From Saccostrea cucullata (taxonomy: Eukaryota), in contig NW_026921197.1 in assembly GCF_032062105.1 (NCBI RefSeq), positions 1 through 64,000 on the forward strand: a stretch of DNA of 64,000 nt. The letters run 5' to 3'. This document shows positions 12,263-63,411 of this stretch, in pieces. Both the position numbers and the translations under genes were made by a program. Within the stretch, counting starts at the first letter, position 1. Each line of letters begins with the position of its first letter. Below the pieces are notes generated by a model. That model saw nothing but the letters and a program-made list of their open reading frames with translations. It did no database searches and was not told where the DNA came from.

Positions 12263-12510
12263 ATATCGTTGATGAGGGTGATGGTATTGCTGAAAAAGAC
12301 AATAGAAGGCCCGGGAGTATCCGCAATTTGCTGTGTATTTTCATATCAGTGTCTGGTGTAATGCTGGTGGCAATCTCGATCTCTCATTTAACGCTGCTTA
12401 TTGTACAGAAGCAAAAGAAGAAATGTGGTGGAAATAATAGTCACCTAGATCAAAATGGCATCTATGAAATAGTAAATATACAAGACGATGCTCAGGAACA
12501 AAGAATGTAA
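12263..12510 (+). CDS. Terminal exon of a single-pass membrane protein (TM plus short tail with YEIV); upstream exons not confidently found
   Basis: tttcag acceptor at 12262, phase 1; DIVDEG...LLCIFISVSGVMLVAISISHLTLLIV (TM) QKQKKK (stop-transfer) ...GIYEIV...*; same layout as the terminal exons at 46602 and 62717. Confidence 0.6.
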
Positions 12511-13632
12511 TTGGTGCTTGAAGAAAATGGATCTCTTTGATTAGAGAATATTTTGTTTTTACTCAATCAAATTCAAAGAAAATCTGCGTAAACTTTTATA
12601 TATCTTTTTTTTTTGCCTTTTTTCTACTGGTTAACTTATTTTTTAGACCAGGTAATGGCAGCGACTTGCAATAGAATTTCCATTGCAATATATGTATTGT
12701 AAAAAACACTTTCAAGAGAAATTAAAATATATCTTTCTAACGTATTAAGTACAATTTATATGAAAATTATATTAAATAGTCAAAAAGAAAATTTATCTAG
12801 TCTTACTCTTTTTTGCAACATTGCAAACATTATCGACAATTTTGACTATTTATATTATTATACGAATCTTAAAACAGCTACACATTTTTCATCAAGAAGA
12901 GTTTCTCGGTATATCGGTACCAAAAAAAATTCACTGAGGTAAAGTGTATTTCAATTTATTAGATTAAACTTTACCTCTTTCGGTATTTTTTTTCAGATGA
13001 AACGTTAAAGATTATTCTTACTAATTGTATTTCGTATGAAGGTTGACTATATCAAAGTTATAAAACTTTCTTTTGATATAATATTTGATGAATAATGTCT
13101 ATTTTTAAAATGACGGTATGAATAAAAACAATTTAACAAACAAGAAGGGGAACAGATTCACAAGCTTTGCTAATCAGTTACGCAAAATATGATAATGTTT
13201 GATACCCCAAAATGACTAGAAAAATGTTTCTGTAAGACAAGACAATCAACGCATCATATGAAAAGGTTAGCAAAAAGATGGAATAGCAAACAAAATAAGA
13301 CAGCATCATAAGAAAAAGTTGGCAAAAAGATGATACATCTAATAAAACTGAAAGATTTCAAAATCTCCTAAACCAATGTTTATGTCGTAGATTTAAATAC
13401 ATAAATAAAATACCTTCAACATACTTTACAAAAGACCTTCAATCAACGCATCAAACACTGTGCGATATGAACTCATACAACTGTATGCTTAACTTCGTAG
13501 AACACATTTCAACAATCAGATGCGAACCAGTTTAATTACTGCGAACCAGGTTTTAAAAACTGTTTGAAACTGTAAAGTATGATTGTACAAAGCTTCTAGA
13601 AATAAATAAGCATAAAGGACTTTCTTATTTAA

Positions 13633-22067: not shown

Positions 22068-22150
22068 TTATTTATTCTCTTTGTCATAGAGAACATTTGT
22101 TGTTGAAATTTGGACAGGTTCGTCGTTTCTTGCTTGTTTGTAACAAATAT
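22068..22150 (-). CDS. Candidate alternative terminal exon of the family X gene (DICYKQARNDEPVQISTTNVLYDKENK*)
   Basis: tttatttacag acceptor; phase 1 matches the donor at 28848; open to TAA at 22068-22070. Confidence 0.35.
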
Positions 22151-22266
22151 CTGTAAATAAACGACTTCATCAGTTAAAGGTAGTAACAAACTATATGAAA
22201 TATTTGAAAGAAAATCGAAAGAATATAACTTGAATATCACAACATGTACATAATATCATCTGTTAT

Positions 22267-24623
22267 TGTAACGGTGGATTTTGCGCATATTAAAAGAACG
22301 CGAAACGCGCACCATACTTTATATACCGACAGTCTATTTATAGAGTTTATATTATTAAAAACTTTGTAAAAATTCTATTTCAATATCAAATTAGTTGTAT
22401 TCTATTTTTATTAATTTTCAGTGCAGTGATTTGAATTTATAAAATGATTATTTATGTCTCTCACTATTTCCTAGATACAAACAGCTAATCGCAGCTTTTT
22501 TTGCTCAGAATTCTATATCAAATACGACAGGACAAATATCCGTGAGAATGAAAATGTCAATTCTTCAATAGTAAATGACGAAAAATTAAGTTTTACAATC
22601 AAGGGGGGAAATCAGCAAAAAACAAAAACATTTTGCACGCACATATAAATATATACATTTTACAAGATATGAACATATACGTTCTGATTTTCCCCATAGA
22701 AAATGGGTCACAAAGAAAACTTTAGTTCTGACTAGATACAACATAAACTTTATAAAAAAAAATTACATATGGCTTATAAAAAGCAAAAGATGATTTTATA
22801 GACTGGCTTGCCTGTCTGATATTCGATATACAGACAGGTGACCAGTAGTGTAAAGATCCTTCTACCTTCTTCGCTCATTGGTTGATAAAAAATCACGCTG
22901 ACGTAGAAATTTAATGTGTCGGGGAAACCAAAACAGATCACTGAGTTCAGAGACACTGGCCGCTATCATGGTTATATCGTTACCTTTAACAATTATATTT
23001 TTGGAAAATTTCTGGGCCTACATGGACATATATTCGGTTTTTAATATGCTTAATACTTTTTAAAAGTTCTCTACATTTGTTTTTTATGCAATCAATATTT
23101 ATTAACATTTCAACAGGGTCTTATATATCATATATTTTATGTTCTAATTCGTTTCCACTTAAACGAACATATTCATAAAAAATGAATAACAACGCGTATG
23201 TGATAGATACTGATGCGCTCTCGTAAGTGCAGTTTAATATTATATACAAGATGTACACAATCTAATTAAAATCAGACTTCTTAGATCCACAGAGATTACA
23301 ATGAAGCACATTGAAGTGGTAAAATTTTCCGTTTGGATTGAACATTTTGAGCTATCTTTAGACAAGCCAATTTCTTTAGAAGAGAAAAAATCGGTCAAAT
23401 GATTCAATCGAATACCTGTAGAACAGGTATTCCATAAATATTTCAGCCAATGAAATTGGCGGCCTACATAAACACTGTTCGACTGATACATATGCTATGC
23501 TACCTCCAATAACCATGATAAAATAATAATTATGTAAAATTTGTTGCAATGGCTGTTTTACATAAGCGGGGAATTTATATATAGTTATAGCTCTTTCTTA
23601 TTTAAAAAGTTTCATTTCAGTGTAACTCATGTTGCTTGTTGGGAAAAATAGGGTGTCCTAAAACATTACGACGAACACTTCTTTCTCGTTTCTAAAGAAA
23701 AATGAGCGTGTCGTTGTTCAAAACATGACTCAGAAGGTTTCATCAAAATAGAGAATTTTACCACTCCAATGCGCTTCATTGTATATTTAAATTAGATTAA
23801 AAAATTTACATTTCCAACTTTCCTTCTTGCGAACTCAATCAAAAACATATAAATAATAAAAACAAAGATGATACTTGTAGGGGTGGGCGGGTTTGGACTG
23901 CGTGAAAGAGCCTTTGAATGGCATTTAACTTTTAAATACGCTAAAGCGTGCTTGCTTTAACAGAATACCCGTAGAACAGGTATTCCATAAATGCATCCAG
24001 TCAGACCGACACTCTTCATACACACTACATAAACACGTGTTCAGTTGGCGGAGTCAGCCGAGGATTGCCGATTGGATCAAGCCAGAAATTCCTGGCTTAA
24101 GATGGTGGTAGTCACCTGTCGTTTCATACGAATAAGACAGGTACTGCCAGTCAAATTATTTTGTTGAGTAAATCTCTGAGACTTAGACTGGTTTGTCAAG
24201 TAATTTATTTATACTCACTGTGCTGACGCCCTTGTGTTGAATGGAACGTGTTCGAGTTTGAAAGTGATGCGTGTTAAGGTAAGAATGTTGTACATTTTGT
24301 GTTTTATTAAACTTGAGTTGTATTAAATATTATATCTTTTTATCGTTTATATAATATATACCAGTTTATTGTTTATTTCAGTGTAGAAACCACGCACGCA
24401 GTGTATAAATTTTTATGTATGAGTGACCGGGTGTGGCATCGCCAAATTTTGTAGGTACGTGTTCAGTTGAATTTAATTTCATATACTGATTCATTCCTTT
24501 ATTTGTGTTTGTGTGCTCTATTGGTAATGTGTGCATATTTTTTGTTTGTTTGTAGCTCATTGCCAATTTGATAATTTAATTTAAAATAAGGAACATATAA
24601 AGAACTTGTATTGAGTCGTTACA
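22267..24623 (+). repeat. 5' LTR (2357 bp)
   Basis: Starts TGTAACGG, ends GAGTCGTTACA; the first about 175 bp and last about 470 bp align with the 3' LTR. Confidence 0.9.
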
Positions 24624-24625
24624 AA

Positions 24626-24640
24626 TGGCGTCGTGGACAT
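24626..24640 (+). promoter_or_regulatory. Primer binding site (TGGCGTCGTGG..., possibly tRNA-Ser type)
   Basis: TGG 2 nt after the LTR end; tRNA identity is tentative. Confidence 0.65.
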
Positions 24641-24897
24641 ACAATTAGAATGAAAATCTGTTGGCGATGAATTACTTCTAGGCCCACTCGATGAATTCCT
24701 GATGTCACGAGTTCAACTACCAATTAACGAGTGCATTCACCAAAGACTTTGAGTTTGGTTTATGATCAACGGCAACGCAACGGATATCTGAGTGTTCCAA
24801 ACAACGCCCATTAAGGTGACAAAAGAACTTCACCTGTTTATAACTGTGCATTTGTCATTATATCTGTGCATTAGTGTATTAATCCTATGTTTCAAAA

Positions 24898-26013
24898 ATG
24901 TCTACTAAAAGGGAAATCACAGAACTTCTTGAACATGAAAAAGAAAAAAATGAGAACAGTTAGAGAGTGAAATAGCGACACTTCACCACAGGATGAAGAA
25001 AACTGAGAGTGCTATGAGTTTGAAAGATATAGAAATGAAATATAGATTGAACCAAAAAAAATAAAACTGTCTATGTTGCGAGGGAGAAAAGATTGGAAGG
25101 TTGTGTGGTAGACCTGTGAAAGAGTGTGACCGCGATGTAGCAGAATTGTTAGATGATGCTAGGCAACATTTAAAAGTTATTGATGATGAAGATGCAAAGA
25201 TATATTTTTTGAAGGACAATTTAGGTGGTCAGGTAAAAGATGAAATAAGATTAAGACCTAGAATGGAGAGAAATACATCTGACAAAATTCTAGATATCAT
25301 TTATGATGTTTTTGCAAGTACAGAAACTTTGGGCGCGTTGCAACATTAATTCTATCAAAGAGATCAGAAACATAGCGAGTCGTTGCAAAATTACTCTTAG
25401 TATTTATGAAATTACTCGACATGATCGTGGCAAATGATTACAATGCTGTAAGCGATTTCGATGGGATGTTAAAGAGGGGTTTGTTGAAGGCATTCGTGAT
25501 TCATCAAGAGTGATAAGACGTTTTTCGTTCGAACAGAAATCTATGCCTTTTGGTGAATTTAGACAAACAGTGTGACGATGGTCTGAAGATTACAAGAGTG
25601 AAGCACTAGGTAAGTCATGCTCAGTACATGAAACTAGCATTCAAGAGAGTATGAAAACAAAGGTTACAAAATCACATGATGATTGTCAGTTATCAGAAAT
25701 TCTTGATATTCTTAAGTTGCAACAAAAGCAAATAGATGAAAATCAAAAAGAGTTAAAGAAATTATCAGAAGAGGTTATGAGAAAAGTAAATCCACAGTTT
25801 GAAACCAAACCTTTGCAAGGAAGACAATTTCCTAAAGCCAGACAATCCCACTTAACATGTTTCCGTTGTGGCGGAAATGCACACAAAGTACAAGACTGTA
25901 GTACTCAGTTAGAAAACAACAATCCTCCACGTAAAGCTAAGTCACAAGGGTCATCTGTCTCTAATTTTCTTTTAAACGCAAAGCGTGTCCAGCAGACGAA
26001 AGTGAGAGGATAA
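24898..26013 (+). pseudogene. gag: Degenerate gag
   Basis: Fragments in several frames; C-terminal zinc knuckle CFRCGGNAHKVQDC (CX2CX4HX4C). Confidence 0.85.
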
Positions 26014-26192
26014 AAGACTCATTTGATCAGATGATCATAGACAGAGCTATAGGGCAATGTCCTGTCGTAACAATACAAATTGAAGGTAAGCCAATTTCGT
26101 GTCTGATTGACACTGGTTCACAAATATCTACTATCACTGAAACTTACTTTCGAGATCTGTTAAAAGCTGAACAGATCTGGAAAGTCAAATAA
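25971..26192 (+). pseudogene. pol: Aspartic protease fragment in the -1 frame after slippery site TTTAAAC
   Basis: FKRKAC...AIGQCPVVTIQIEGKPISCLIDTGSQISTITETYF; D-T-G catalytic motif; truncated soon after. Confidence 0.85.
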
Positions 26193-26327
26193 AAACGCAG
26201 TTAGTCTTAGCAGAAGGTATTTAGAGAGTAATTATGAGGAAATTTTAGCAGAATTATCACAAAGTATTTCCTTGAGAGAGTTTATTACAAGTGTCAGACA
26301 ATTACAACGGAAAAAGAACTTACTCCT

Positions 26328-27625
26328 ATGTTTCCAGGATACACCTCAGACGATTTGCGGAAACTGCAGGTGGAAGATCCAAAGATCAGTAGAGTACTTC
26401 ACTGGATGGAGATTGGCCACAAGCCAACATCACGTCAAATTTCAAAAGAGAACGGAGAGGTGAGAAATTATCTAAGGAAGTATCATTTCTTACAGTTCAA
26501 GAATGGTGTCTTGTATATGAACAGTAGGGGATGAGATGGGGAATGTTTGCAGTTAGTTTTACCGGAATGTCTGAGACCACAAGTAATGGAATCTCTGCAT
26601 GATTGTTCTGGACACCAGGGTCGCGAGAGAACATTTGCACTTGTGAGGAAAAGATGCTACTGGCCAGGAATGCAGGCAGACGTGATCAAATGGATCGACA
26701 GATGTGAACGATGCAAGATTATTAAGGCACCTGTTCCAACTATTCGACCATCAATAGGTAACTTGATAGCTAAACAACCATTAGACATACTGGCAATGGA
26801 TTTTACATGATTAGAAAAATCTTCAGATGGTTTCTTGTTTTGATGGACGTCTTTACGAAATTTACCATGGCAATTCCTACAAAGATTCAAAAAGCATCTA
26901 CAGTAGCTAAACAGTTAGTCTACAATTGGTTCTATAAAATTGGCATTCCGAGTCGTTTGCACAGTGACCAAGGTAGGAATTTTGAAGGTGAGATGGTTAT
27001 AGAGTTATGCAAGTTGTAAGGTATCAAAAAGTCACGCAGCACACCCTATCATCCTGACGGTAACTCGCAATGCGAGAGATTCAACAGAACGATGCATGAT
27101 AGATTAGGAACGCTTGATGCGCAGAGAAAAAGAAAATGGACGGCGTTTTTGCCAGAACTTGTTTATGTATATAAGGTTACACCTCATTCTGTTAAAGGGT
27201 TGACTCCTTATTTCCTCATTTATGGAAGAGAACCAAAATTACCTGTAGATTTCTTGTTAGGTACCAACAAAGACGATGTAAGTTACCAGGTAGACGATTG
27301 GTTGAAGTTCCACAAAGAGCATCTTAAGTACGCCTGGAGTGTTGCAGGTAAGAACACAGAGAAGAGCGCAGAAGAACGACGAGAGTTTCACGAAAGGAAA
27401 TCCACTCCTTGTTCAATTGATGTAGGATCAAAGGTCCTGATCAAAAACCTTGTACAAGGTAGGAATAAGATACAAGATGTGTGGAAATCAGATCCTTACA
27501 TTGTCGCAGGTAAGTTACAGGAAAATGTTTATGTAGTGAAGTCAGCAGATGGTAGTAATGAAACAAAAGTTCTACATAGAAACGAGCTCTTATATGAAAG
27601 AAAAGGACCTAAACAAGCAAAATAA
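26328..27625 (+). pseudogene. pol: Degenerate integrase
   Basis: LHDCSGHQG...YWPGM...CERC zinc finger; LAMDF, MDVFTKF, LHSDQGRNFE, TPYHPDGNSQCERFNRT; TPYFLIYGREPKLPVD; split by stops and frameshifts. Confidence 0.93.
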
Positions 27626-27737
27626 TATTTTTGAAAAGTCTGATTCTGATCAGGAGGTAGAGAGATAGATTATGGCTTTGAACGAATGACATTTTTTCGT
27701 ATTTTTAGAAATTGTGTATATAGTTAGTTTTAGATAC

Positions 27738-27776
27738 TTGTTGATGAGGGCATCAACAAAATTGTGCGGGGAGGAA
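27738..27776 (+). promoter_or_regulatory. Hairpin plus polypurine tract
   Basis: TTGTTGATG-AGGG-CATCAACAA stem-loop followed by GGGGAGGAA immediately before the 3' LTR. Confidence 0.75.
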
Positions 27777-28470
27777 TGTAACGGTTAATTTTGCGCATAT
27801 TAAAAGAACGCTAAACGCGCACCATACTTTATATACCGACAGTCTATTTATAGGGTTTCTGTCCTTGCGCCAGGTATTTAATTTTATTTAGAGATTATAT
27901 TATTAAAAACTTTATAAAAATTCTATTTAAATATCAAATTAGTTGTATTCTATTTTTCATTAATTTACAGTGCAGTTATTTGAATTTATATTATTATTAT
28001 TTTGTTGAGAAAATCTCTAAGATTTAAACTGGTTTGTCAAGTAATTTATTTATATTCACTGTGTTGACGCCCTTGTGTTGAATGGAACGTGTTCGAGTTT
28101 GAAAGTGATGCGTGTTAAGGTAAGAATGTTGTTCATTTTGTGTTTTATTAAACTTGAATTGTATTAAATATTATATATTTTTATCGTTTATATAATAAAT
28201 ACCGGTATATTGTTTATTTCAATGTAGAAACTACACACACAGTGTATAACTTTTCATGTATGAGTGACCGGGTGTGGCATTGCCATATTTTGGTGGTACG
28301 TGTTCAGATGAATTTAATTTCATATACTGATCCATTCCTTTATTTGTGTTTGTGTGCTCTATTGGTAATGTGTGTATATATTTTGTTTTTGTTTGTTTGT
28401 AGCTCATTGCCAATTTGATAATTTAATTTAAAATAAGGAACCTAAAAAGAAGTTGTATTGAGTCGTTACA
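27777..28470 (+). repeat. 3' LTR (694 bp)
   Basis: TGTAACGG...GAGTCGTTACA; lacks about 1.7 kb present in the 5' LTR. Confidence 0.92.
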
Positions 28471-28688
28471 TTATATTCACATAACCAAGCGCATTACACA
28501 AAATATATTCGATGGCTCCTATAATCAATGTAAAAGGGCAGTGGACAAATAGCAGGGAACTTTGGTGCTTACTTGTGTGTAAACGTTTAATAATGATGAG
28601 TCCCCGACACCCAGGGAGACCAATATAAAGCTTTTTGATGAACAATCTTTTGAAAAAGGGGTAGGAGGTACAAACCGGATTAATTGCC

Positions 28689-31600
28689 TCACAAGTGAGA
28701 TAGATTTGATAATAACGCTGTAGGGTCTCTCACGATTACAGGCTTTTTACAACACAGATAGTCGCCTGTATAATCTTTGCTGGGTGCCAGCTTCATGTTA
28801 CGAATACAAGAGAATAAACATTACCTAAAGCTCAATTGTTGACTTACCATGACGACTGGAGTTATACTTCCTACTTTTAAATCTGACCTGATCAGTGCTA
28901 TATTTCATATAAAATAATTTCACTTTAGGAACCCCTGCAATAAAAAAAAAAATATCACAATTTGTTTTTCCAGTTACTTCTCATAAAATGTCAAAAATGG
29001 TTTGGAAATATCTATGTCGTTGAGCATACCTTTACAAATGATCAACACTGCACCGACTCCAAATATAATGAACGCAGTTAGAGTGACAATCACCATTGTA
29101 AAATCAACATCATTCATGCGACTGAAAGAAAGAGAAAAATGCTTTTAAAACTTAAATTGGTTTAAAAAGTACATATTAACATTTAAATACCAAAGAATGT
29201 CTTTTTTATCATTTCACTGTACATGTACTTAGCCCCCCCCCCCCCCCTTTTTGTGAACAAAGTTATGGAATATTATTTGAAAAATCAACTATTGTTTTTA
29301 ATTAAAAGAAAGACAGCGTTGACGACCATTTTCAAATCGTTTGTAATTCTACGCTTTCCTGTGTCCATTCTTGTGTCCATTATTTAAACGAAAATATAAT
29401 TGTAAGGACAAAACAAACCTTGTATTTTTATTGGTAGTTGTGTTTGTCTTATTCGATTGAATAAAATAAACAGTGGTTGTTGCTATTTCACATTTGTTTT
29501 TGAGGTGGCGTTTACGACGACCTGTGGCAGACCTGCATTTTTTTCTTATAGGTGCTATAGATGAAGAATTTGAGGATTTAGATGTTACCTCAACAGTTGG
29601 TTGGATAGTGCTCTCAGGAACAGCTATAGACTTAATTGATTGAAAACAAGATGGATCTGCAAAACGAAAAATGTATTCCTTAAAACAGTTGGAAAAAAGT
29701 AAAGCGTAAAAGGCTGTGAACATTGAAAATTATTTTTTTTCAAAGATATATATAAGACCTCCCGGATAAATATGTTTGTTGTTTTCTATATTTTATGTAT
29801 CTTAATTAAAACATTATACCCCAAATTAGTTAGTGTATTCAAATATTATAACAAACAAACAATGAATATTCATGAATATTCATATTTACATTTAATAATA
29901 CGGAAATATTTTAATTTTTGTTTATTTTTTTTTCAAAATGAAAACAACATGTGTTTGTTAAACACTATACACCCATCAGCAATACAATTTAATATTTAAA
30001 ACGCTATTTTCAGCATATATTTCAAAGTCAAGGTCACTGACCTTGAAGTCATTTGAAAGAACTTGATTTGTAAATTATTGATATCAAATATAAAGTCTCT
30101 ATCTCTTATGGTTCAAAAGTTATGGCTAAAGTACGAAAAAAACTATTTTTAGCATACAGGTAACATTCAAGGCTACAAGGCCATTTACCTTGGTGTTATT
30201 TGAAAGAGATTTTTTGGTGAGGTATGCATGCAAAACATGAAGTCTCTATCATTCAAGGTTCAAATGATAAAGCGAAGGTTAAAGTTTTCAGATAAAAAGC
30301 TATTTTAGAATATAGATCACAGTCAAGGTTGCAAGGTCGATGACCTTGGTGTCATTTGAAAGAACTTAATTGGCGGAGTAGCCATAGCAACTATAAAGTC
30401 TCTATCTGTCATTGTTCAAAAGTTATGGTGATGGTGCAAGTTTGCAGACAAACAGACAAACAAAAAGACATACAGACAAGACAATTAAACCAATATACGC
30501 TCCGGATCTATCAATCCAGGTGCATAAATAACACCACTGATAATGCATTTGGAGTACTTACACGTTATCGATTCATTTGAATAGTAATGAAAAGGACATT
30601 CTGAACAGGCAACACTGTAATCCTCTACAATACGACCTAATCCCCCGTTGAACTGAACGCAGCATTTTCCTACAACAGATCATTTCAATGTTAATTGAGA
30701 CTCCTTAACATGCCAAAATATTTTAGTTCTTCCGAATTGTTTTGGTGAAATTCAGTTTTATTTGATTATTACATTAGGAATAAGGGGAAAGCAAAAATAA
30801 TATTAATTAATAGATATGCAGAAAAACATGAATGTTTTGAATGGATAAAATCATATCCTTTTTTCTAATTTGGCAAAATGTAAGTGCAATCAAAATCACA
30901 CCCTTGAATGTTTTTTCTAGAAAATTATTTTTTTGAAAGTTTCAGCCATTCGAAATTCGAATCTCTCATATTTTAATCGCAAATGTTACACATTATTGCA
31001 CTGGCGTCACAGGTGTATTGTTAAGCACGGTCAAGCAAAATATATATTTCATTTCCAAAACAAATAATTTATGGTGTCTCCTATCAATCCCGTTAGAATT
31101 TTAAAAATTGATAATTGATAATTGACAGGATATTTGTTATAATTTCTGCTGTTTGGATGTACAAATCAGCAAAGGAATTAAACAAAAAATGTTCTTGACT
31201 GGAGTTGCAAGGGCTTTGTCACTATTCAAAACAATCGTTTTGCCCGATCCTTTCTTCTGTACTAAATATATTCAAAGAATTAGTACCCTGGATTTTAAAT
31301 TTTCAAAAGGGAAAAAAGAGACATTTTAATGTCGCACGCACATCATCTAGTAGGGATGTTGTGAATCTTGGAAAAGTTTACAGCGCCGTCGAACGTCATG
31401 AAGAAATTATATTTCTAGTCAATAGTANNNNNNNNNNNNNNNNNNNNNNNNNNNNNNNNNNNNNNNNNNNNNNNNNNNNNNNNNNNNNNNNNNNNNNNNN
31501 NNNNNNNNNNNNNNNNNNNNNNNNNNNNNNNNNNNNNNNNNNNNNNNNNNNNNNNNNNNNNNNNNNNNNNNNNNNNNNNNNNNNNNNNNNNNNNNNNNNN

Positions 31601-42199: not shown

Positions 42200-42407
42200 T
42201 CTACATGTATTGAAAGTAAGGCTTCCCAGAGATTTCTGTTTAAATTGATATTAAGTGGTAAACCATTTGACAAAAGTGTTCATCTGCATTTGAACACTGC
42301 TTTTCTTCGGATTCATTTAGCCATTCGTCTCTATCATTTAGACATACATTTATTTTCTTGACCAGTATTACTTTCGAGCAATCTGTTTCGTTGAATCTGC
42401 CATTTAT
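42200..42407 (-). pseudogene. Family X pseudogene exon (frameshifted)
   Basis: cttcag acceptor, phase 0: INGRFNETDCSKVILVKKINVCLNDRDEWLNESEEKQCSNADEHFCQMVYH, then a frameshift into LNINLNRNLWEA; Cys/W/YH spacing matches exon 2 of the other family X copies. Confidence 0.65.
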
Positions 42408-46601: not shown

Positions 46602-47191
46602 ATTTACCCTTTACCCGTGTTGATAATGCTTCTGAGTTACCCCGGACAAAAATACCCGTGGACAGTGTCCCAAATACGCGTAATTATTTTTTACTCACGT
46701 CAATTTTGTTCGTTGTGGGATCTGTTTTACTAATAGTTACACTTCCGATAGTTCTTTGCTGTGTTTTATATAAGAAGAGGAAAACACTCTTTAAGAGAAA
46801 GGACCTGCCTTTGCAAGATGCTGTACGCATAAATAAGAGTGATGTACAACAAAATACCAATGAGTACGAAACACTTGGGTATGAGACATTATTTCAGGGT
46901 TTTGGTAATCTTTCAATTTTTTAAAACCGTAGGAGAGAATCTTACTCTATAAATATTTCATCAAGGGACATATGTGGTAAAGAAGAAAAACCTCGTGCAG
47001 TGGCAACAAGTCAAACAATCGAAATAAATTCCCTGAATACATTTGATCAAGACAACCCGTATGTGCTGCCAAATAATGTCCATACAGAATCATCGACAGA
47101 TGTACACACGTTTAATGATGAACTTATCGCAACAACAGAATCTGACTGCAAAAACAGCAATGTGTACGTATCGATTATACCCTCAGACTAA
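46602..47191 (+). pseudogene. Family Y terminal exon (stalk, TM, Tyr-rich tail) with one in-frame TAA at 46922-46924
   Basis: tttgtag acceptor; TM FLLTSILFVVGSVLLIVTLPIVLCCVLY followed by KKRK; YETLGYETL; the two listed ORFs are in the same frame and 46925-46999 is open (NRRRESYSINISSRDICGKEEKPRA); ends NVYVSIIPSD*. Confidence 0.75.
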
Positions 47192-48444: not shown

Positions 48445-48480
<36 letters not shown>

Positions 48481-49775: not shown

Positions 49776-49779
<4 letters not shown>

Positions 49780-51273
49780 TGATACAAGAAAATATCATAC
49801 TGGCTATTTAGTTTTTCTTTACCACATATACATGTATAATACTATTTTGGTGCAAAAATGTTATATAATAATAAGTGCGCATTAATTTACATGATGTGTT
49901 CAATGATTTATATTAGTTCNNNNNNNNNNNNNNNNNNNNNNNNNNNNNNNNNNNNNNNNNNNNNNNNNNNNNNNNNNNNNNNNNNNNNNNNNNNNNNNNN
50001 NNNNNNNNNNNNNNNNNNNNNNNNNNNNNNNNNNNNNNNNNNNNNNNNNNNNNNNNNNNNNNNNNNNNNNNNNNNNAAATATTAATCAACCAAAGAATTA
50101 CAATTTAAGTGCAAAAAATCAAATTAATTACGTCGCAGCTTAGTAAGATGCACAATGTTCCCTTATTTTTCTACCAGTGTTGACCATGCTATATAAGTAC
50201 TTGTCTAAAAAATATCGTCTATAGTATCCTATTTTCGACTGTATTGTGTTTTCGACCTATTTTTCCCAATCTGCTTCCCGTGCAGATACCGCACGGTAGA
50301 ATTTTTTTTCGGTTGCTACATTTGGAAAAATACCTGTGAAGCACTGATGTTGTGAAAAACACTCAAAATAATTCATTCAGCGGAATTCCCCATTGGTTTA
50401 AGTCTGTTGTCAGAAATTCTAGTCTTTTTACAAATGCTCATTTTATCTGTACATTAATGAAATCCGAAATCGATTAATTACGAAGATTTTGTGATGACAT
50501 TGTTCCGAAAGAAAGTTAAGATCTCTGTCAAAAAGACACATGAATATTGAAATGAAAAGATGGGTCAAACATTTCTTTTCTTCCTTAAATATGGACATTT
50601 TTTTTACAGATTTTTACTGAAAAATTCAACGTAATTTTTTGTGGAAATGCACAGCTACTGACAGATGGGTTCAAACAACGAATAACTGTTTTTGCAACCC
50701 AAGTATGCAACTTGTTCAATGTTTTTTTTTTTTTTTTGAAAAACAGACAATCGTATTTTTATTGTTTGGAATATCCAATGGATATTTATAGCCAATACTT
50801 ATTGGGAGTTGATACTCTACTTAGGTGGAAAAGACAACGCTAATATTTTGTAAGGAAAATTGCACCCTCTCCATATTGACATTTAAATAGAATAAGCACA
50901 AAACTGCAATTAAGGTTATATCAGTTTTATTTATAGACACATATGCTAACATTTTAAGCCCATATTTTCTCAGATTATTTAATGTTTGCAATAAATTATA
51001 AATAACATCTAAAAAGGTCGAAGATACAATACGCCAGGATACTTCTTCAAAATGCTTGATATAACTAATTTCACGACTGACATACCTTAATATCTATGAA
51101 CAGTTGCAATAATTAACTGGTTTCTGTTTTGATTCTTATTACTTCAATGTAAAATAATAATAATAACAATACTAATAATAATAATGATGATACTATTAAT
51201 AATAAAGAAATCGTCACATAATACATGTACTTTAGAAAAAAATAGCTATCTATGCCACTAAGCTAAAACTTAC

Positions 51274-51919
51274 AATTATATGCTTTCGTGGATTCATATC
51301 TAAATTGGCAAGACGTAGAGAAGTTTTAACAAGATGTAAAAAGGTTTGGTTCAATCCTACATCCCCTCATGTTGAACTCTGGGCAGTGGTAACCTTTAAT
51401 TATAATAAACAATGTTAAATAATTGACATTTTACTTCAATATATCCTGCTTTTTCTTGCTTCGTTAGCCTCTCTCCAAAAATACTCAAGAGGATATATGA
51501 GGAAATTGGCTCCCTATTAGCGTCAATTTAATAATCAAGTGCATAAATTGCTTGAATTAAAGTATATTCCTACCGTTACTTTTTGATATCAAATTGTTAG
51601 GATTATCTTCGAATTAATGTTTGGTATTTTTTTTTTTTTTGGAGAACATTAGTCTTTTTTTTTTTTACTTGCAATTAGAATATCTTTACTTGTAATTTAT
51701 TTAATATTTACCAATAATTCTTTTGGGCTTTGCACAGACAGACAAAGTCATATTCATCCAGGTATTGATGAGACAGTGGTACACTAGGCAAGGTCTCAAT
51801 GTTCCACTAGAACAGTTCTTTATAAGGGCCTGTGCCTCCCATTCACCTTTTGTGCGAGGACAATGTCATCTACTGACAGGTTTTACTTTACTTGCCATGC
51901 ATGTTTCTTCGCCATATAT
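51274..51919 (-). pseudogene. Family X pseudogene, exons 51919-51712 and 51393-51274, each with one nonsense codon
   Basis: IYGEETCMASKVKPVSR*HCPRTKGEWEAQALIKNCSSGTLRPCLVYHCLINTWMNMTLSVCAKPKRII|GYHCPEFNMRGCRIEPNLFTSC*NFSTSCQFRYESTKAYN; GT-AG sites intact, phases 0/1/1 as in the 28689-33754 gene; TGA 51866-51868, TAA 51326-51328. Confidence 0.85.

Positions 51920-54713: not shown

Positions 54714-54715
<2 letters not shown>

Positions 54716-54776
<61 letters not shown>
54716..54776. repeat. (GA)n microsatellite
   Basis: Direct reading. Confidence 0.95.
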
Positions 54777-58622: not shown

Positions 58623-61600
58623 ATGACAGCATGTAGAAGTGTTATTATTGTTTTTATTTTTATGCTATATTTACAAGCATTGAAAGGGAATAGTACAACG
58701 CTAAAGCCTCGGAGATGTGACGGGTAAGAAATTATTTTTGATGAAATTGAATTATTTCACATCTTCTCTGTATGATAAAAACCCAGCTAATTTATATGAA
58801 ATATATACTACATGATCATTTTTCATTAAAAGGCCAATTTTATACGAGCATCAAACAAAATTATATTCATATATTATAAACAAATCAGACGAGCGCGTAG
58901 CGCAGTGGTCACATGGGACGTGAATAGCAGAATAGCAGTCCTTTCGATGAAACTGTTTAAACCGAGTTTCCATGCTAAAGTATGTGTTGAAACCATAAAG
59001 ATTCCTTCCTGTTCAATTGATCTGAGCCGGATAATGATTAAAATTTATTGCCCTTCTCTGGCAAGTGATGGCGTCTTCATATGTGTAAAAAAAAATCATG
59101 AGAGGCACGTTAAATGATATGCAGACAATAGGCAAATCATATTATACGTATTTCATCCCCAACGTAGGAAAGAAATTATGAAGAATAAATAACTTGCAAG
59201 CAATAAGTATCATTTTTTTTTCAATGATATGAGACATGTTGTGGTACATTTTGACATTACAAAATAAATAAATAGCGTTTATATTTTCTGACTCAAATTA
59301 CAATTAAATAATAAAACTAAAGATGAATTTTCTGAATTTATAACAATTTTTATGGGGGTGAGGTATTACTTTACCAAATAACATTAGAAAAAAAGGCAAG
59401 GTATGCATAACAAGGCTGAGTGAAATCTTACAAATTTAGTGCTTCAGTAACAACAACTTTTCTATATGTGTAGGAAAAGAAAATAATATGACCAAAAAAA
59501 TATGATTGTATGCTTATAAGATTTTCTTTTTTTTTTGGAGTAAATTATTTCTAAGTTTAAAAATAAAAAAAGGATTTTCATTCGTATCATATGAAACTCT
59601 CAGCAAGGACATTTAAAGAAAATTATGTTTAATTTATCATTATATATTTTATTCAAAATTAAAAATAAGCATTGAAAGAAAAGTCTCAAATACCCCATAT
59701 ACAAATACATTGTTAAAAACCATTTTGTGATAATACATGTGTAAGACTCCAAGGTCCGATGGTGACGCCAAAGCCCGATGGTCTCGCAAAACCCCGATGG
59801 TCTGCGCGAAACCCCGAGGGTTTGTTGTCGTCACGGACGCCAAAGTCCGATGGTCACGCCAAAGTACGATGGCTCGTTTCCTATAAGACGCTTTGCGCTA
59901 AAGTGTGATGGTCTGTCACGCCAAAGTCCGATGGTGTGAAGAAACAATCGACAGTTTATGACGTCACAATAATTCGACGTCAATCCTTGGCGCCGTTTTC
60001 CTGCATTTAAAAATGCCATCATTTCCGAATTATCCTTGCACACTTTTTTATTTATTTTGTGTATTACTTACATGTTTCAGAGATATTAGGATCAGTCCTC
60101 GCACACAACTCAACTGTTTAGGGTTAATCCTTTTAGTTTTATTGATTTAGGGTTAGTCCTCGCACACTAGTTATTAGGGTTAGTATCGCACCCACCCAAG
60201 ATATATAAGTATCTATATACACATGTAGTTGTAAGGCCTACACACTTTTCGAGCGATTAGGGTTAGTTTTGCACCTATCCGAGAGATAAAGGTTAGTTTT
60301 TGCATAATGATTTTTCATGTTTATTTAAAATTTTGGCATGGTGAAGCATTGTAGTTTGCCGCATTATACGTATTATGACGTTTTAAACGTAAATTGTTTT
60401 CAGCACCATCGGGGTTTGGCGTGCCAAACCGTCGGGGATTAGCGCAGACCATCGGACTTTGGCATGACCATCGGATTTCGGAGTCCTATCATACGTTGGA
60501 GTCCTACACATGTATTAAGAACAAAATGAAGTGGACTGAATCTAAATTGCATACATTTGAGAGAAAAAAAAATAATGTGCATTTAATGGAATTTCTCTTG
60601 CTTTTTTAAAAATTTTAATACAAGATTTTGTATTCTGCTTGTTCTTTAAAAACTTCGCATCGTGATAGAGTGGTTTACATTTAACCATGTACTTCCTATT
60701 TTACTGAAAACAAAGTTCATGGCACCGTTTCTACTTAGGAATATGTCCCCGTCAACGTGTTTTCCAGGAATCTGATTATTTTTTTTTATATAAATATAAA
60801 TATTTTTCCTCTTTTGCTATTGGTTGGAGTCCGTCATGTCTTCTATTGTTCGCTCTTCCTCTTCAAATTTCTTCTTTAAAGGAGTCTTTCCATTTTGTGA
60901 AGGTGAGCTGCTTATTGTATAGAAATAACTTTCAAACTGTTTGTTGCTTTTAAGATTTTTGAATAATACGCTGAAATATTATATGGATTTTTTAAGGACA
61001 TTTCAGAAATGAGCGTTCTTACAAATGAATAAACTTCGCGGTTTTGCAAAATAAAACAATAATAATCTAACGCGGTCTTAAAACCAATGAAAGTATTTCA
61101 TGTAGGTTTAGAATCTTAATGTAGGGAATCAATGATTTAACAACTACAGAACAATTCTGCGGAAGAAAAATAATTAAGATAAATTAATGAAAACATTAAA
61201 AGAAATTTTTTTTAGATCTGCTTTATATTTTTATTGATTGACCTATTTTACGTCCTTTGTGAGATTTATAGGGACGCTCAGATAAAATCCGATGGAGGGT
61301 TTTAATGTTTAACCTATCTTCGGCTATCAGGGACATTGAGAAAAAAAGTTCCTTATCCTGTCATTACTTGTCCTATGATTGAGAAAAAAATGCTATTAAA
61401 CCTGGAGGAATTTACAAATTACACATGAAGTAATATTTTTTCTGTTATCTTATGTGCCTTATTTATCTTATATAATTATGCATATATAACCAATTACATG
61501 ATACTGTACAATTATGTCATTTGCATTTTTAATTGCATTTACATGTAAATATAACATTGTAATTTTATATCAGAATCCGGAAACATGAAACCAGACCTTT

Positions 61601-63411
61601 CAATATCAGGATTTATTTTTTTTTTTTTGTTATCACTATATATGCATGTACATGTACTTGAAGTTCATAATTAATTTCCATGCTCTGAATATTTGAAGCC
61701 ATTTGAACTATTTATCCATTTTTTTCACAAGGGAAAATAAATGCTGCTTCGGCTTTACATGGGATGAAGAACTGCAGGGCTGTAGAAGTAAATACTTTTT
61801 ATGCCTTCTCTTTTCCCAACCGCTATGAAAAAGGATAAAAGACAAATGTTTATTGAAGTTGAATTTTTATTGATCAAATTAAAGGTTTTGATCAATAAAC
61901 ACAAATTGTAGCTTATATTAGCATTAAAGGTTACCAACAAAAATGGACAATTGCTCTTTACAAATATAAAATATTTCTTACATACATGTATAATAATAAC
62001 AGACTTCAACTTCAATATTATTTTTATGAACATACATGCATAATACATGCATGCTCTATTTGCCTTCATATGCTAATGCTGTATCAAATAGTACAGAACA
62101 AAGTAAAAGAAAAAAAAAGAAAATAATTATTAGATTTAAAAAACAATGTCACTTGAAAAAAAACAAATCACTATAAATTTCAAAACAGTCTTGTTTTTCC
62201 TATTCAATAGTTCTCCGTTTGCAAAATCGGAAAGGCTGTAGAAAACACTTAAACATTTCAACATTTCTATTCTTCTCTCCTTTTTCAGAGTGTAGCACCG
62301 GGTTCCACGGAGTTTACTGTAATAAGTCATGCCTATATCCATATTACGGAACAGACTGTGATGAAGAATGCCATTGTGAAAAACCAACTTGTAATTTTAT
62401 CACGGGTTGTTTAGGTATTCTTTATATTTAACAGTTGATATACATGTACATATATCTTATCATTTTTACGGACTTATCATAGCCTATGAACAGGTGTTTG
62501 TCAAGATTTCAACTGAATAAAAATTCTGAAATAATTATGATAATTTTTTTTTATAATATAAAAAAATATGTTTGTATTTAAATATTATCCAAATATTGCT
62601 TTTTTCACTTGAAAAATAAAGCTCAAAGATTTTCAGAAACCGTATTTTGTTTAATCTATGTTTGCACTTTAGGATTTTTAGGGCCTGTTGTCTATGGTAT
62701 GTAATTTTTTTTTCAGACAACACAACAGATATATATACATCATCGGATCAGTCATCTACAGACACCTATGAATTCTTCACTAGTGTTACGACATCATCTA
62801 TACACAACGAATTGTCTTTGAAAAGTCTCCAGTCGCCATCTTCTATTAATCAAATTATTTCTTTTTCCCTTCGCGATTTCCTTCTTTTTATTGCCGGGGT
62901 ACTAATTGTACTCATTTTGATCACAGTAATCAATGTTTTTATATGTAAACGTCGTGCTAAAAGAAATTATGTAGTTTTTAACGAGAAAGAAATTAAATGT
63001 TCATTGATTGAATCAAAAGATACTGTTAAAAATACATGCAGAAGAAATACGAAAATCATAATATCACACTGCACAGAAAACAATTCCTGCTTCTTGGAAA
63101 TTACAACAGACAAGGACAATACAGACACCAAAAATAGTTGCTATTCAAACGCTGATGTTGATAAAGAAGAACGGGAACAAAACAGAAAAATTGACTCGAT
63201 ATATGACCAAACCCAATTGCATCTGTGCACAATTAAACCATTGGGACAAGAAGAAACAATTTACAACATCAGTCAATGTTCCCAATATGAACTCGACTGC
63301 TACACGGATGTAAAGGAGGTATCTGACGAAAATCATTCAACAACTACTACGAAAGTTTCACATGAGAATGAATACATCAGTGTACCATGCTGCCCAGAGT
63401 GTGAAAGTTAG
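58623..63411 (+). CDS. Family Y gene: 325-aa type I membrane protein with MEGF10/SREC-type EGF-like repeat and Tyr-rich tail; exons 58623-58723, 61732-61787, 62289-62414, 62717-63411
   Basis: GT-AG introns, phases 2/1/1, 978 nt open. Signal MTACRSVIIVFIFMLYLQALKG; CDGENKCCFGFTWDEELQGCRK; CSTGFHGVYCNKSCLYPYYGTDCDEECHCEKPTCNFITGC; S/T stalk; TM FLLFIAGVLIVLILITVINVFIC-KRR; seven tail tyrosines ending NEYISV. Confidence 0.88.
58888..59120 (+). mobile_element. Diverged SINE copy in intron 1
   Basis: TAGCGCAGTGG A-box, GTGGGACGT-like segment, TTCGATGAAACTGTTTAAACCGAG core similar to 48090-48385. Confidence 0.55.
59731..60517. mobile_element. MITE with 22-bp TIR, CCGATGG subterminal repeats and internal TTAGGG motifs
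   Basis: TAATACATGTGTAAGACTCCAA / TTGGAGTCCTACACATGTATTA (1 mismatch); about 20-bp CCGATGGT repeats at left and ACCATCGG at right. Confidence 0.85.

What the first reader, a model, noticed from the sequence alone, without database searches (positions are those of the whole stretch)
12263..63411. Two-family, strand-segregated receptor cluster undergoing birth-and-death, with head-to-head X/Y pairs
Seen: all three family X copies (Cys-rich ectodomain) are on the minus strand (33.7-28.7, 42.4-42.2, 51.9-51.3 kb) and all three family Y copies (TM plus Tyr tail) are on the plus strand (12.3, 46.6, 58.6-63.4 kb). X42/Y46 and X51/Y58 face away from each other, suggesting a duplicated X-/Y+ cassette. 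Only one copy per family looks intact. The ORF track misses this because the exons are tiny. Inference: a paired receptor/co-receptor or immune/allorecognition-type locus with rapid turnover and possibly shared bidirectional promoters. The EGF exon is shown only for the 58623 gene; the other Y copies are grouped by terminal-exon architecture.
Basis: partly seen in the sequence, partly recalled or inferred. Interest (0 to 1): 0.75.

Follow-up and report, generated by a model that had tools for sequence, protein, structure and literature searches.

The report
Two interleaved oyster membrane-protein gene families
This stretch of an oyster genome holds two unrelated families of small cell-surface protein genes that sit side by side on opposite DNA strands, one working gene and two decayed copies of each, and the same opposite-strand pairing recurs on many other pieces of the genome, which hints that the two families expanded together and may work together.

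Summary
The window is contig C3334 of a Saccostrea cucullata assembly.

**Family X** (three minus-strand copies) is an uncharacterised oyster family: signal peptide, a roughly 110-residue 10-Cys "YHC" ectodomain with no Pfam or PDB-fold match, stalk, membrane helix and short tail.
- X33 is intact. It is annotated as LOC134259446 and runs to 22.07 kb, not 28.7 kb.
- X51 carries two in-frame stops.
- X42 is an exon-2 remnant.

**Family Y** (three plus-strand copies) has a signal peptide, a "CCxGFxW" exon, one SCARF/MEGF-type EGF exon, a membrane helix and a Tyr tail.
- Y58 is intact, and spliced contigs in two runs guessed to be RNA support its exon structure.
- Y46 and Y12 are terminal-exon relics. 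They show no similarity to each other or to Y58, but their paralogues elsewhere carry the CC and EGF exons.

**Genome-wide pattern.** 34 of 249 X loci have a listed Y EGF exon within 20 kb, against about 1.3 expected by chance. Of the 39 X–Y pairs, 38 lie on opposite strands. Leaving out this locus and its copies, it is 24 of 25 pairs on 18 contigs. An independent alternating array on C7584 was confirmed.

**Reading.** This is best explained by block duplication of an inverted X–Y unit followed by decay. Functional pairing, immune or allorecognition roles and shared promoters remain untested. The earlier scan note s1-716831 concerns X33 in this same window.

The parts
12256..12507 (+). Y12 is a relic of a family Y gene. 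Only the terminal exon survives (end of stalk, membrane helix, short tail with '..IYEIV..'). No signal-peptide, CC or EGF exon lies upstream in the window.
   Evidence: It is 59.5% identical over 84 aa to the terminal exon of C13605:323103-323357. That gene has signal-peptide, CC and EGF exons 1-1.4 kb upstream. The EGF profile and the CC motif find nothing near Y12 in the window.
22068..33757 (-). X33 is an intact family X gene, NCBI LOC134259446, with 7 exons at about 33757-33641, 32228-32027, 30669-~30560, ~29654-29421, ~29120-29028, ~28935-28849 and 22151-22068.
   Evidence: P0161 (isoform X2 of LOC134259446, on a contig of 179312 bases = C3334) matches exons 1 and 3-7 at 100% where exonic. 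Paralogue protein P0154 aligns to all parts without stops. Exons 1-2-3 are phase-compatible by arithmetic on the splice sites. Profile E-values are 9.6e-30 (exon 2) and 1.5e-18 (exon 3).
24300..28450 (+). A degenerate LTR retroelement (gag with a CCHC motif, protease-like and integrase-like frames, repeated ends) lies inside the last intron of X33. I only observed it.
   Evidence: ORFs. The same roughly 63-aa frame recurs at 24381-24575 and 28234-28422.
31428..31604 (.). Assembly gap inside X33 intron 2.
   Evidence: The flanking exons are in the right order and phase.
42243..42431 (-). X42 is an exon-2 remnant of a family X (subtype b) gene. The frame ends just after 'VYH', and no exon 3 was found.
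   Evidence: Profile E 0.0013. It is 44-46% identical to C13605:382449-382616, which is an intact exon 2 followed by an exon 3. No family protein hits it at E <= 1e-3.
42533..42754 (.). Assembly gap about 100 bp 5' of the X42 remnant. It could hide an X42 exon 1.
46568..47188 (+). Y46 is a relic of a family Y gene. Only the terminal exon survives (stalk, membrane helix, long Tyr-rich tail with 'NEYETLGYETL'). It is interrupted by an in-frame TAA at 46922-46924, and no CC or EGF exon lies upstream.
   Evidence: It is 55.7% identical over 210 aa, across the stop, to C13605:377084-377899, which is annotated as LOC134272360. Homology to the paralogues ends near 46.57-46.69 kb. Stop context.
49920..50076 (.). 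Assembly gap between Y46 and X51, next to a repeat block at 48.5-49.8 kb.
51274..51919 (-). X51 is a family X (subtype b) pseudogene. Exon 2 (51919-51712) has a TGA at 51868-51866 inside a 6-bp insertion. Exon 3 (51393-51274) has a TAA at 51328-51326.
   Evidence: Three-way DNA alignment with the intact copies C23774:67942-68621 and C13605:361293-361601. Coordinates. Profile E 9.2e-9. dN/dS is 0.36-0.38 against the intact copies, versus 0.08 between the intact copies.
58623..63411 (+). Y58 is an intact, transcribed family Y gene with 4 exons (about 58623-58723, 61732-61787, 62289-62414, 62717-63411): signal peptide, 'CCFGFTW..C' exon, one EGF exon, then Ser/Thr stalk + membrane helix + roughly 160-aa tail ending '..NEYISV..'.
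   Evidence: P0001-P0003 map to four exons. GT-AG sites and 325 codons with no internal stop. Contigs in runs X1 and X5 join 58613-58722, a 57-letter piece, 62289-62412 and 62715 onward (table 8).

Best explanation
The window is a piece of an old, still-turning-over gene array of an oyster. Two unrelated, lineage-restricted families of small type I membrane proteins alternate in it on opposite strands.

Family X has this layout:
- a signal peptide;
- an RxKR site;
- a 10-Cys alpha/beta ectodomain with an invariant YHC motif and no known fold;
- a Ser/Thr stalk with a second Cys-flanked RxKR loop;
- a membrane helix and a short tail.

Family Y is a 'mini' MEGF10/Draper/SCARF-like protein. It has a CCxG(F/Y)xW remnant, one EGF, a stalk, a membrane helix, and a tail with YxxL/V/I motifs.

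The array grew by tandem and segmental duplication of blocks that contain both an X and a Y in inverted orientation. Direct duplication preserves relative orientation, so X genes stay on one strand and Y genes on the other. This holds here and on at least 18 other contigs. Copies then decay by nonsense mutations, loss of 5' exons and repeat or retroelement insertions. That leaves one live gene per family in this window (X33 and Y58) and four relics (X42, X51, Y46, Y12).

Shown: the families, gene models, pseudogene lesions, collinear paralogous blocks, genome-wide co-clustering and strand rule, one co-duplicated X+Y unit, and splicing of Y58.

Inferred: that descent from a single inverted pair, rather than selection, explains the strand rule; and that Y signals through its Tyr motifs with X as a neighbour-encoded partner.
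For: **Families**
- The X domain has 205 cluster representatives at E <= 1e-3, and 22 at E <= 1e-10.
- Those looked up are 'uncharacterized' proteins of Saccostrea cucullata, S. echinata, Ostrea edulis, Magallana gigas and Crassostrea virginica.
- At least 392 and 397 candidate loci exist in the own genome.
- X has no Pfam family.
- The AF2 model of P0004 has mean pLDDT 88.5 and about 96 over residues 40-150. Foldseek finds 0 matches at E <= 1e-3 and VIA-wide gives a best Z of 2.7.
- The Y EGF exon has 3048 candidate loci. It matches EGF repeats of 6u11 (E 4.6e-8), SCARF1 (0.046) and Tie2 (0.07).
- The Atlas neighbours of Y are molluscan hypotheticals, then EMI/EGF_PEAR1L proteins at 0.82-0.85.

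**Collinear blocks**
- The order Y12, X33, X42, Y46, X51, Y58 is mirrored on C23774 and partly on C13605.

**Genome-wide pattern**
- 34 of 249 X loci have a listed Y EGF exon within 20 kb. My arithmetic gives about 1.3 expected by chance.
- Of the 39 pairs, 20 are divergent, 18 convergent and 1 on the same strand.
- Without the seed contigs there are 25 pairs on 18 contigs: 14 divergent, 10 convergent, 1 same strand.
- A second Y list comes from a DNA pattern (1194 matches against 199 for the control; the first 100 are listed). It gives 8 of 9 pairs on opposite strands within 20 kb and 21 of 25 within 50 kb.
- An independent alternating array X+,Y-,X+,Y-,X+,Y- lies on C7584:190-250 kb. Its first and third Y genes have CC, EGF and terminal membrane-helix exons. 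The middle one has CC and EGF exons only.

**Co-duplication**
- X20/X46 are 67% identical and their neighbours Y58''/Y58' are 93% identical.
- Mantel r is 0.61 (31 of 720 permutations reach it) for convergent partners and 0.75 (1 of 120) for divergent partners.

**Decay**
-.

**Expression**
- Spliced Y58 contigs. NCBI models exist for X33 and for the Y46 paralogue.
Against: - Both Y lists are partial: 150 of 3048 candidates, and the first 100 of 1194 pattern matches. They overlap in part, and the X list covers 249 loci merged from two capped searches. The fraction of X genes that have a Y neighbour is therefore unknown.
- The pairs are not independent events. Many arrays descend from one another, so the binomial figure overstates the evidence for anything beyond common descent.
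- Exceptions exist: C18225 (same strand, 5 kb), C1850:68219, and Y+ at C13605:321 kb.
- Many Y arrays have no X (for example C14 and C610), so Y does not need X nearby.
- The window's own Y12 and Y46 are assigned to family Y only through paralogues.
- C3334 and C23774 might be divergent haplotypes rather than paralogous blocks. Identity runs from 97% to about 70%, and dS from 0.06 to 0.47. This would change 'duplication' into 'allelic presence/absence' for part of the story.
- The stops in X51 and Y46 rest on a single assembly and were not checked with reads.
- No functional or co-expression data exist.
Confidence: 0.7

Rival explanations
1. The pairing is functional and kept by selection. Each X and its neighbouring Y encode partners (receptor and co-receptor, or receptor and cis-ligand, as in self/non-self or immune recognition loci). 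Tight linkage in inverted orientation preserves co-adapted or co-regulated pairs.
For: - The strand rule holds for both deeply diverged X subtypes, which are 20-30% identical.
- Neighbours co-vary.
- The cluster is kept in S. echinata. There the Y58 orthologue is LOC133200471 and an X33-like gene is LOC133200473, both on one contig of 7332661 bases.
- Both families are cell-surface proteins, and Y tails carry YxxL/V/I motifs.
- The EGF exon differs by 16 of 124 letters between the window and transcript contigs, against 8 of 397 in exon 4.
Against: - There is no evidence of interaction or co-expression.
- dN/dS is below 1 everywhere measured, from 0.08 to 0.84.
- Distances between 5' ends are several kb here and on C7584.
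- Many Y arrays lack X.
- Inherited orientation after block duplication explains the pattern without selection.
Confidence: 0.22
2. The apparent duplicates and relics are largely products of an uncollapsed, error-containing assembly. C23774, C13605/C8797 and C4672 are alternative haplotypes, and the stops or missing exons are sequencing or assembly errors or lie in gaps.
For: - The assembly does hold redundant contigs. C4672 is 99.5% identical to window 7689-17709. C4118 mirrors C23774 and C8797 mirrors C13605, with identical scores.
- Gaps lie next to X42 and X51.
- No run holding half or more of the stretch's words was available to check.
Against: - True haplotigs here are 99.5% identical. 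C23774 is about 70-97% identical with dS up to 0.47, and a third collinear block exists.
- X51 has two separate lesions plus raised dN/dS.
- The missing Y46 and Y12 exons would lie in gap-free sequence.
- The genome-wide strand rule rests on 18 contigs that show no duplicate scores with each other.
Confidence: 0.06
3. X and Y lie together only because both are large families that pile up in the same duplication-prone regions. Their relative orientation is accidental.
For: Both families are very large, and bivalve genomes are rich in tandem arrays (search listings only).
Against: - 38 of 39 pairs, and 24 of 25 without the seed contigs, lie on opposite strands within 20 kb, where 50% is expected.
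- A second list gives 8 of 9.
- Strict alternation is seen on C23774 and C7584.
Confidence: 0.02

Closest known systems
MEGF10 / Draper / PEAR1 and SCARF1 (SREC) class of EGF-repeat engulfment and scavenger receptors
   Same: - Family Y has a 'CCxG(F/Y)xW...C' stretch where these receptors have an EMI domain (the comparison with EMI is my recall).
- Its EGF follows the C..G[FY].G..C...C..P.[FY]G..C...C.C pattern, which matches EGF repeats of 6u11, SCARF1 and Tie2.
- It is a single-pass membrane protein with a tail carrying Tyr motifs.
- Atlas neighbours with names are EMI/EGF_PEAR1L proteins at 0.82-0.85, which is a lead only.
   Different: - Y has one EGF, not many.
- There is no Pfam EMI or EGF hit at E <= 0.1.
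- The proteins are about 110-330 aa.
- The tails lack a clear NPxY plus ITAM arrangement.
- The own genome holds thousands of candidate loci.
Co-duplicated neighbouring gene families, e.g. vertebrate TNNI-TNNT pairs
   Same: Two families sit side by side, and their members were duplicated together so that paralogues come in neighbouring pairs (PMC9825255; I saw only the search listing and the start of the abstract).
   Different: - Here there are hundreds of copies from local block duplication, not a few from ancient large-scale duplication.
- The two families are not sister families.
- The orientation is inverted throughout.
- Decay is heavy.
Paired, head-to-head immune receptor genes (plant paired NLRs) and two-gene recognition loci
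   Same: Two different genes are kept adjacent in inverted orientation and multiplied as pairs. The loci turn over quickly and hold many pseudogenes. (This is recalled. Plant NLR reviews appeared only as search listings.)
   Different: - No shared short promoter was seen here.
- Convergent neighbours are as common as divergent ones.
- No evidence exists of physical or genetic interaction.
- The protein families are entirely different.

Membership tests
Family X (unnamed oyster 'YHC' Cys-rich type I membrane proteins; defined here hits) | Exon-2 domain with the pattern C..T...V..CP.......C......C...(L)VYHC.......(E)VCAP...I.G | tested here: met
   X33 E 9.6e-30, X51 E 9.2e-9, X42 E 0.0013 (marginal and truncated) against a profile of 63 family proteins. 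Invariant columns are listed.
Family X (unnamed oyster 'YHC' Cys-rich type I membrane proteins; defined here hits) | Second half of the ectodomain on the next exon (CC.QF.EG.GR..ED....C..CPF.Y.S), then stalk, membrane helix and short tail | tested here: met
   Met for X33. For X51, exon 3 is present but carries a stop. Not met for X42, where no exon 3 was found.
Family Y (single-EGF, CC-exon type I membrane proteins; defined here) | CCxG(F/Y)xW..C exon followed by one EGF exon with the 8-Cys pattern of alignment A1 | tested here: met
   Met for Y58 only (E 9.4e-23). Not met in the window for Y46 and Y12. Met by their paralogues on C13605 and, with defects, on C23774.
Family Y (single-EGF, CC-exon type I membrane proteins; defined here) | Terminal exons homologous among members | tested here: not met
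   The Y12, Y46 and Y58 terminal exons do not find each other in the genome search at E <= 1. They share only architecture: stalk, membrane helix and Tyr tail.
MEGF10/Draper/PEAR1 | EMI domain (Pfam PF07546) and several EGF_PEAR1L/laminin-type EGF repeats | tested here: not met
   Neither P0001 nor the window exons give a Pfam EMI or EGF hit at E <= 0.1 (weakest lead EGF_STAB1-2, E 0.37). There is only one EGF exon.
MEGF10/Draper/PEAR1 | Cytoplasmic NPxY and ITAM-like YxxL/I pair | tested here: inconclusive
   Read from the sequences: 'NEYISV' in Y58, 'NEYETLGYETL' in Y46, 'IYEIV' in Y12. YxxL/V motifs are present, but there is no NPxY and no ITAM spacing. The motif definitions are recalled.
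Head-to-head gene pair with shared bidirectional promoter | Divergent 5' ends within about 1 kb | tested here: not met
   X51 exon 2 (51919) and Y58 exon 1 (58623) are 6.7 kb apart. On C7584 the Y CC exon and the next X exon 1 are about 6.4 kb apart. One locus, C13754, has the X and Y exons 1.5 kb apart; I did not examine it.

The most novel reading that the evidence does not exclude
X and Y are co-evolving, cis-linked partner genes. Each Y (a mini Draper/SCARF-like, Tyr-signalling receptor) works with the X encoded next to it (a new-fold, probably furin-processed Cys-rich surface protein). The oyster genome would then hold hundreds of such matched pairs in strand-segregated alternating arrays. 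That would be a combinatorial recognition system for non-self, self or gamete/larval settlement cues, and it would vary between haplotypes by gain, loss and exon-level mosaicism.
Probability: 0.2. Interest if true: 0.85.

Novelty: new variant of a known kind. Interest (0 to 1): 0.6.

Why it matters
Bivalve genomes are known for huge lineage-specific gene expansions and for presence/absence variation, but most expanded families of 'uncharacterized proteins' have no organising principle.

Two unrelated surface-protein families appear to have expanded together, gene by gene, in a fixed inverted arrangement across many contigs. That gives a concrete, testable hypothesis of partnership between them. 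The tests are co-expression, binding between neighbours, and co-phylogeny.

It also flags family X as a widespread oyster ectodomain with a confidently predicted fold that has no detectable counterpart in the PDB.

If the pairing is only inherited from block duplication, the locus is still a clean example of how array architecture fossilises the orientation of the founding unit.

Tried and rejected
**Readings I tested and dropped**

1. I first suspected that X and Y were the N- and C-terminal halves of one architecture. I rejected this. Full-length X proteins have their own stalk, membrane helix and tail and no EGF. Y58 orthologues have no YHC domain.
2. Pairwise BLASTP among the three X exons gave only weak hits or none. 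I replaced it with a family profile and genome hit-list overlap.
3. Pfam on the exons and on full-length proteins gave nothing above threshold.
4. The fold search with the full-length model matched only the membrane helix. I repeated it with an ectodomain-sized family member and still found no match.
5. A random sample of 30 X loci with 10-kb flanks, meant for an unbiased neighbour census, could not be fetched.
6. Five literature searches found no description of either family or of the pairing. I read only listings and abstract starts. Supplements were not consulted and could hold gene-family tables that bear on this.
7. The search for homologous proteins for Y58 and for the Y46 paralogue returned only 3 hits and 1 hit. 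The spread of Y across species is therefore not established by that route.
8. No sequencing run holds half or more of the words of the stretch searched (58.5-63.5 kb). Presence/absence among individuals, and the reality of the stops, stayed unchecked.
9. Weak hits of the X profile to Y terminal exons (E 0.002-0.09) and of P0134 to Y46 (E 7e-4) cover membrane-helix regions. I treated them as compositional.
10. The spliced models of X33 and Y58 were searched exon by exon only.


Full report
**Source and setting**

The window is AT-rich eukaryotic DNA with about 31% G+C and four N gaps. It is contig C3334 (179,312 bases) of a 1.17-Gb assembly in 23,869 contigs.

The lengths of contigs C23774 (131,931) and C13605 (478,939) equal those recorded for NCBI genes of Saccostrea cucullata. 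One annotated S. cucullata protein matches the window's exons letter for letter. The genome is therefore that oyster's.

**Family X**

The exon at 32.2-32.0 kb (minus strand) has at least 392 candidate relatives in the own genome. Of these, 150 were scored, all at E <= 0.0023. An exhaustive HMMER search found 205 cluster representatives at E <= 1e-3.

Full-length members are 220-330 aa. In order, they have:
- a signal peptide;
- an RxKR site;
- a roughly 110-residue domain with ten conserved Cys and an invariant Y-H-C;
- a Ser/Thr stalk holding a second C...GRxKR...C loop;
- a membrane helix and a short tail.

Every member I looked up is an 'uncharacterized protein' of S. cucullata, S. echinata, Ostrea edulis, Magallana gigas or Crassostrea virginica. 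There is no Pfam match.

AlphaFold2 on a 64-row family alignment gives a confident ectodomain, with pLDDT about 96 over residues 40-150 of P0004. Foldseek finds no PDB match at E <= 1e-3, and VIA-align against 48,161 chains gives a best Z of 2.7.

A profile of 63 members scores the window's exons as follows:

| Element | E-value |
|---|---|
| X33 exon 2 | 9.6e-30 |
| X33 exon 3 | 1.5e-18 |
| X51 exon 2 | 9.2e-9 |
| X42 | 0.0013 |

X splits into two subtypes that are only 20-30% identical. X33 is subtype a. X42 and X51 are subtype b.

**State of the X copies**

*X33* is intact and annotated as LOC134259446.
- Isoform X2 (P0161) matches exons 1 and 3-7 at 100%.
- A degenerate LTR retroelement lies in that intron.
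- Exons 1, 2 and 3 are phase-compatible.
- The gap at 31428-31604 lies in intron 2.

*X51* is a pseudogene.
- It has a 6-bp insertion carrying a TGA (51868-51866) and a TAA in exon 3 (51328-51326).
- Both positions are open in C23774 and C13605.
- Its dN/dS is raised, at 0.36-0.38 against 0.08 between the intact copies.

*X42* is an exon-2 remnant that ends after 'VYH'. Its collinear paralogue on C13605 is an intact X gene with an exon 3. The gap at 42533-42754 could hide an exon 1, but the defects lie outside the gap.

**Family Y**

Y58 maps exon for exon onto three annotated proteins of 325-326 aa, at 88%, 85% and 67% identity. Its four exons are:
- signal peptide (58623-58723);
- 'CCFGFTWDEELQGC' (61732-61787);
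- one EGF (62289-62414);
- stalk, membrane helix and long tail (62717-63411).

All splice sites are GT-AG. The four exons add up to 325 codons with no internal stop.

Contigs of runs X1 and X5 (labelled 'RNA?', a guess) join 58613-58722, a 57-letter piece, 62289-62412 and 62715 onward. A run on record as RNA (X12) has pieces that start exactly at 62715. This supports the splicing. These contigs differ from the window by 16 of 124 letters in the EGF exon, but by 1 of 110 in exon 1 and 8 of 397 in exon 4.

The EGF matches EGF repeats of PDB 6u11 (E 4.6e-8), SCARF1 (0.046) and Tie2 (0.07). Named Atlas neighbours are EMI/EGF_PEAR1L proteins at 0.82-0.85. Pfam gives no EMI or EGF hit.

However, the paralogues of Y46 (C13605:378252-377084; C23774, with defects) and of Y12 (C13605:321663-323357) carry CC and EGF exons homologous to those of Y58. 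The EGF exons are 35-47% identical with all Cys conserved. The family is therefore real.

In the window, the EGF profile finds only Y58's EGF exon on either strand. The CC motif finds Y58's exon and one chance match inside the retroelement, on the minus strand. Homology of Y46 and Y12 to their paralogues stops at the start of the terminal exon. Y46 also has an in-frame TAA at 46922-46924, and conservation continues beyond it. Both are relics.

**Collinear copies**

The order Y12(+), X33(-), X42(-), Y46(+), X51(-), Y58(+) is mirrored gene for gene on C23774 (105 kb down to 55 kb), and in part on C13605.

DNA identity to C23774 varies along the block:
- 97% over 54.9-59.4 kb;
- 86-90% on either side of that stretch;
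- about 70-83%, and only in patches, elsewhere.

dS ranges from 0.06 (Y58 exon 4) to 0.39-0.47 (Y58 EGF exon, X33 exon 2). A true haplotig, C4672, is 99.5% identical. I read C23774 and C13605 as paralogous blocks with patches of exchange. Very divergent haplotypes are not excluded.

C23774 reads as follows:

| Gene | Position | Strand |
|---|---|---|
| X | 20 kb | + |
| Y58'' | 33→25 kb | - |
| X | 46 kb | + |
| Y58' | 60→55 kb | - |
| X51' | 68 kb | + |
| Y46' | 72→71 kb | - |
| X42' | 78 kb | + |
| X33' | 87-94 kb | + |
| Y12' | 106→105 kb | - |

I merged the two capped X searches into 249 loci and compared them with the 150 best of 3048 Y EGF candidates.

- 34 of 249 X loci have a Y exon within 20 kb. 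I calculate about 1.3 by chance (249 x 150 x 40 kb / 1.17 Gb).
- Of the 39 pairs, 20 are divergent, 18 convergent and 1 on the same strand.

I then dropped the window's contig and its collinear or redundant copies (C3334, C23774, C13605, C8797, C4118, C4672).

- 25 pairs remain on 18 contigs: 14 divergent, 10 convergent, 1 same strand.
- One or fewer same-strand pairs out of 25 has binomial probability 7.7e-7, by my arithmetic. The pairs are not independent.

A second Y list comes from a 30-place DNA pattern. It has 1194 matches against 199 for the reversed control, and only the first 100, on contigs C14-C2554, are listed. It overlaps the first list in part.

- 7 of 22 X loci have a match within 20 kb.
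- 8 of 9 pairs lie on opposite strands within 20 kb, 21 of 25 within 50 kb, and 32 of 41 on the same contig at any distance.

I fetched one independent region, C7584:190-250 kb, and annotated it. It reads X+, Y-, X+, Y-, X+, Y-. The first and third Y genes have CC, EGF and membrane-helix exons in the right order. For the middle one, only the CC and EGF exons were found.

Equal numbers of divergent and convergent neighbours are what an alternating array gives. The strand rule, not 'head-to-head', is the regularity.

**Co-duplication**

On C23774 the neighbours (X20, Y58'') and (X46, Y58') look like a duplicated unit. The X pair is 67% identical, and the Y pair is 93% identical in the EGF exon.

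Across the few pairs available, X-X and Y-Y identities correlate:
- r = 0.61 for 6 convergent pairs, with 31 of 720 permutations reaching it;
- r = 0.75 for 5 divergent pairs, with 1 of 120 reaching it.

This test is underpowered and uses only a 40-residue EGF. The window's own two 'cassettes' are old at best. The intact C13605 paralogues of X42 and X51 are about 30% identical. The EGF exon of Y46's C13605 paralogue is 45% identical to that of Y58.

**Mechanism**

The simplest account is that an ancestral inverted X-Y pair was multiplied by direct (tandem and segmental) block duplication. This keeps the relative orientation. Copies then die by nonsense mutation, loss of 5' exons and insertions.

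Selection for linkage of functional partners would give the same picture, and these data cannot separate the two. Several points argue against the stronger reading:
- dN/dS is below 1 wherever measured, 0.08-0.84.
- Several kb separate the 5' ends.
- Many Y arrays have no X.

Other points argue for it:
- The rule persists across two deeply diverged X subtypes.
- The cluster is kept in S. echinata, where LOC133200471 is Y58-like and LOC133200473 is X33-like.
- The Y58 EGF exon is markedly variable.

Any role in immunity or allorecognition is conjecture.

**Literature**

Five full-text searches turned up no description of either family or of the pairing. I saw only listings and abstract starts, and supplements are closed. 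The nearest concept I met is co-duplicated neighbouring families such as TNNI/TNNT (PMC9825255, listing only).

The earlier scan note s1-716831 describes X33 on this same window as a 7-exon type I membrane protein with a Cys-rich ectodomain. I agree, with the last exon moved to 22.1 kb.

**Verdict**

The two-family, strand-segregated, birth-and-death architecture is real and genome-wide. The recent-cassette, bidirectional-promoter and functional readings are unproven.

Noticed in passing
window 24300-28450 (+): A degenerate LTR retroelement (gag with a CCHC motif, protease-like and integrase-like frames, no clear reverse transcriptase frame, repeated ends) sits inside the last intron of the X33 gene. 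I only observed it.
   Followed up: no
window 48550-49520: A block of about five head-to-tail repeats of roughly 165-180 bp, each with a similar open frame on the minus strand. Related copies lie on C23774 near 48 kb and 79 kb. Together with the adjacent gap, it makes the window about 2.2 kb longer than C23774 at this point.
   Followed up: partly
family X proteins (P0154, P0009, P0028, P0035, P0158; window 29.5 kb for X33): There are two conserved dibasic RxKR motifs. One lies just before the Cys-rich domain ('..KRFT..'). The other lies in a Cys-flanked loop of the stalk ('C..GRxKR...C'). Both look like furin-type processing sites, which would make X a processed, perhaps two-chain, surface protein.
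   Followed up: no
P0004 / P0154 ectodomain (models mcf401c4144db, m84be11bddbf7): The family X ectodomain is a confidently predicted alpha/beta disulfide-rich domain (pLDDT about 96). It has no Foldseek match at E <= 1e-3 and a best VIA Z of 2.7 against 48,161 PDB chains.
   Followed up: yes
window 62289-62412 against contigs of runs X1 and X5: Spliced Y58-like contigs differ from the window by 16 of 124 letters in the EGF exon, but by 1 of 110 in exon 1 and 8 of 397 in exon 4. dS against C23774 is likewise 0.39 in the EGF exon and 0.06 in exon 4. This points to exon-level mosaicism or strong polymorphism of the EGF exon.
   Followed up: partly
window 33689-33639 and P0161: The annotated isoform X2 of LOC134259446 starts in another frame of exon 1 and skips the Cys-rich exon 2. 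It would therefore lack both the signal peptide and half of the ectodomain. It may be a non-productive transcript or an annotation artefact.
   Followed up: no
C4672:5001-15000 against window 7689-17709: A 19.7-kb contig is a 99.5% identical copy of this part of the window. The assembly therefore holds uncollapsed haplotigs. In that copy, the Y12 relic has further stops and a frame break.
   Followed up: partly
C3334:66381-69053 (L016): A second Y58-like copy lies directly downstream of the window's end. It is 63% identical in the terminal exon, carries three stops, and has an EGF exon at 66.4 kb. It is another decayed tandem duplicate.
   Followed up: partly
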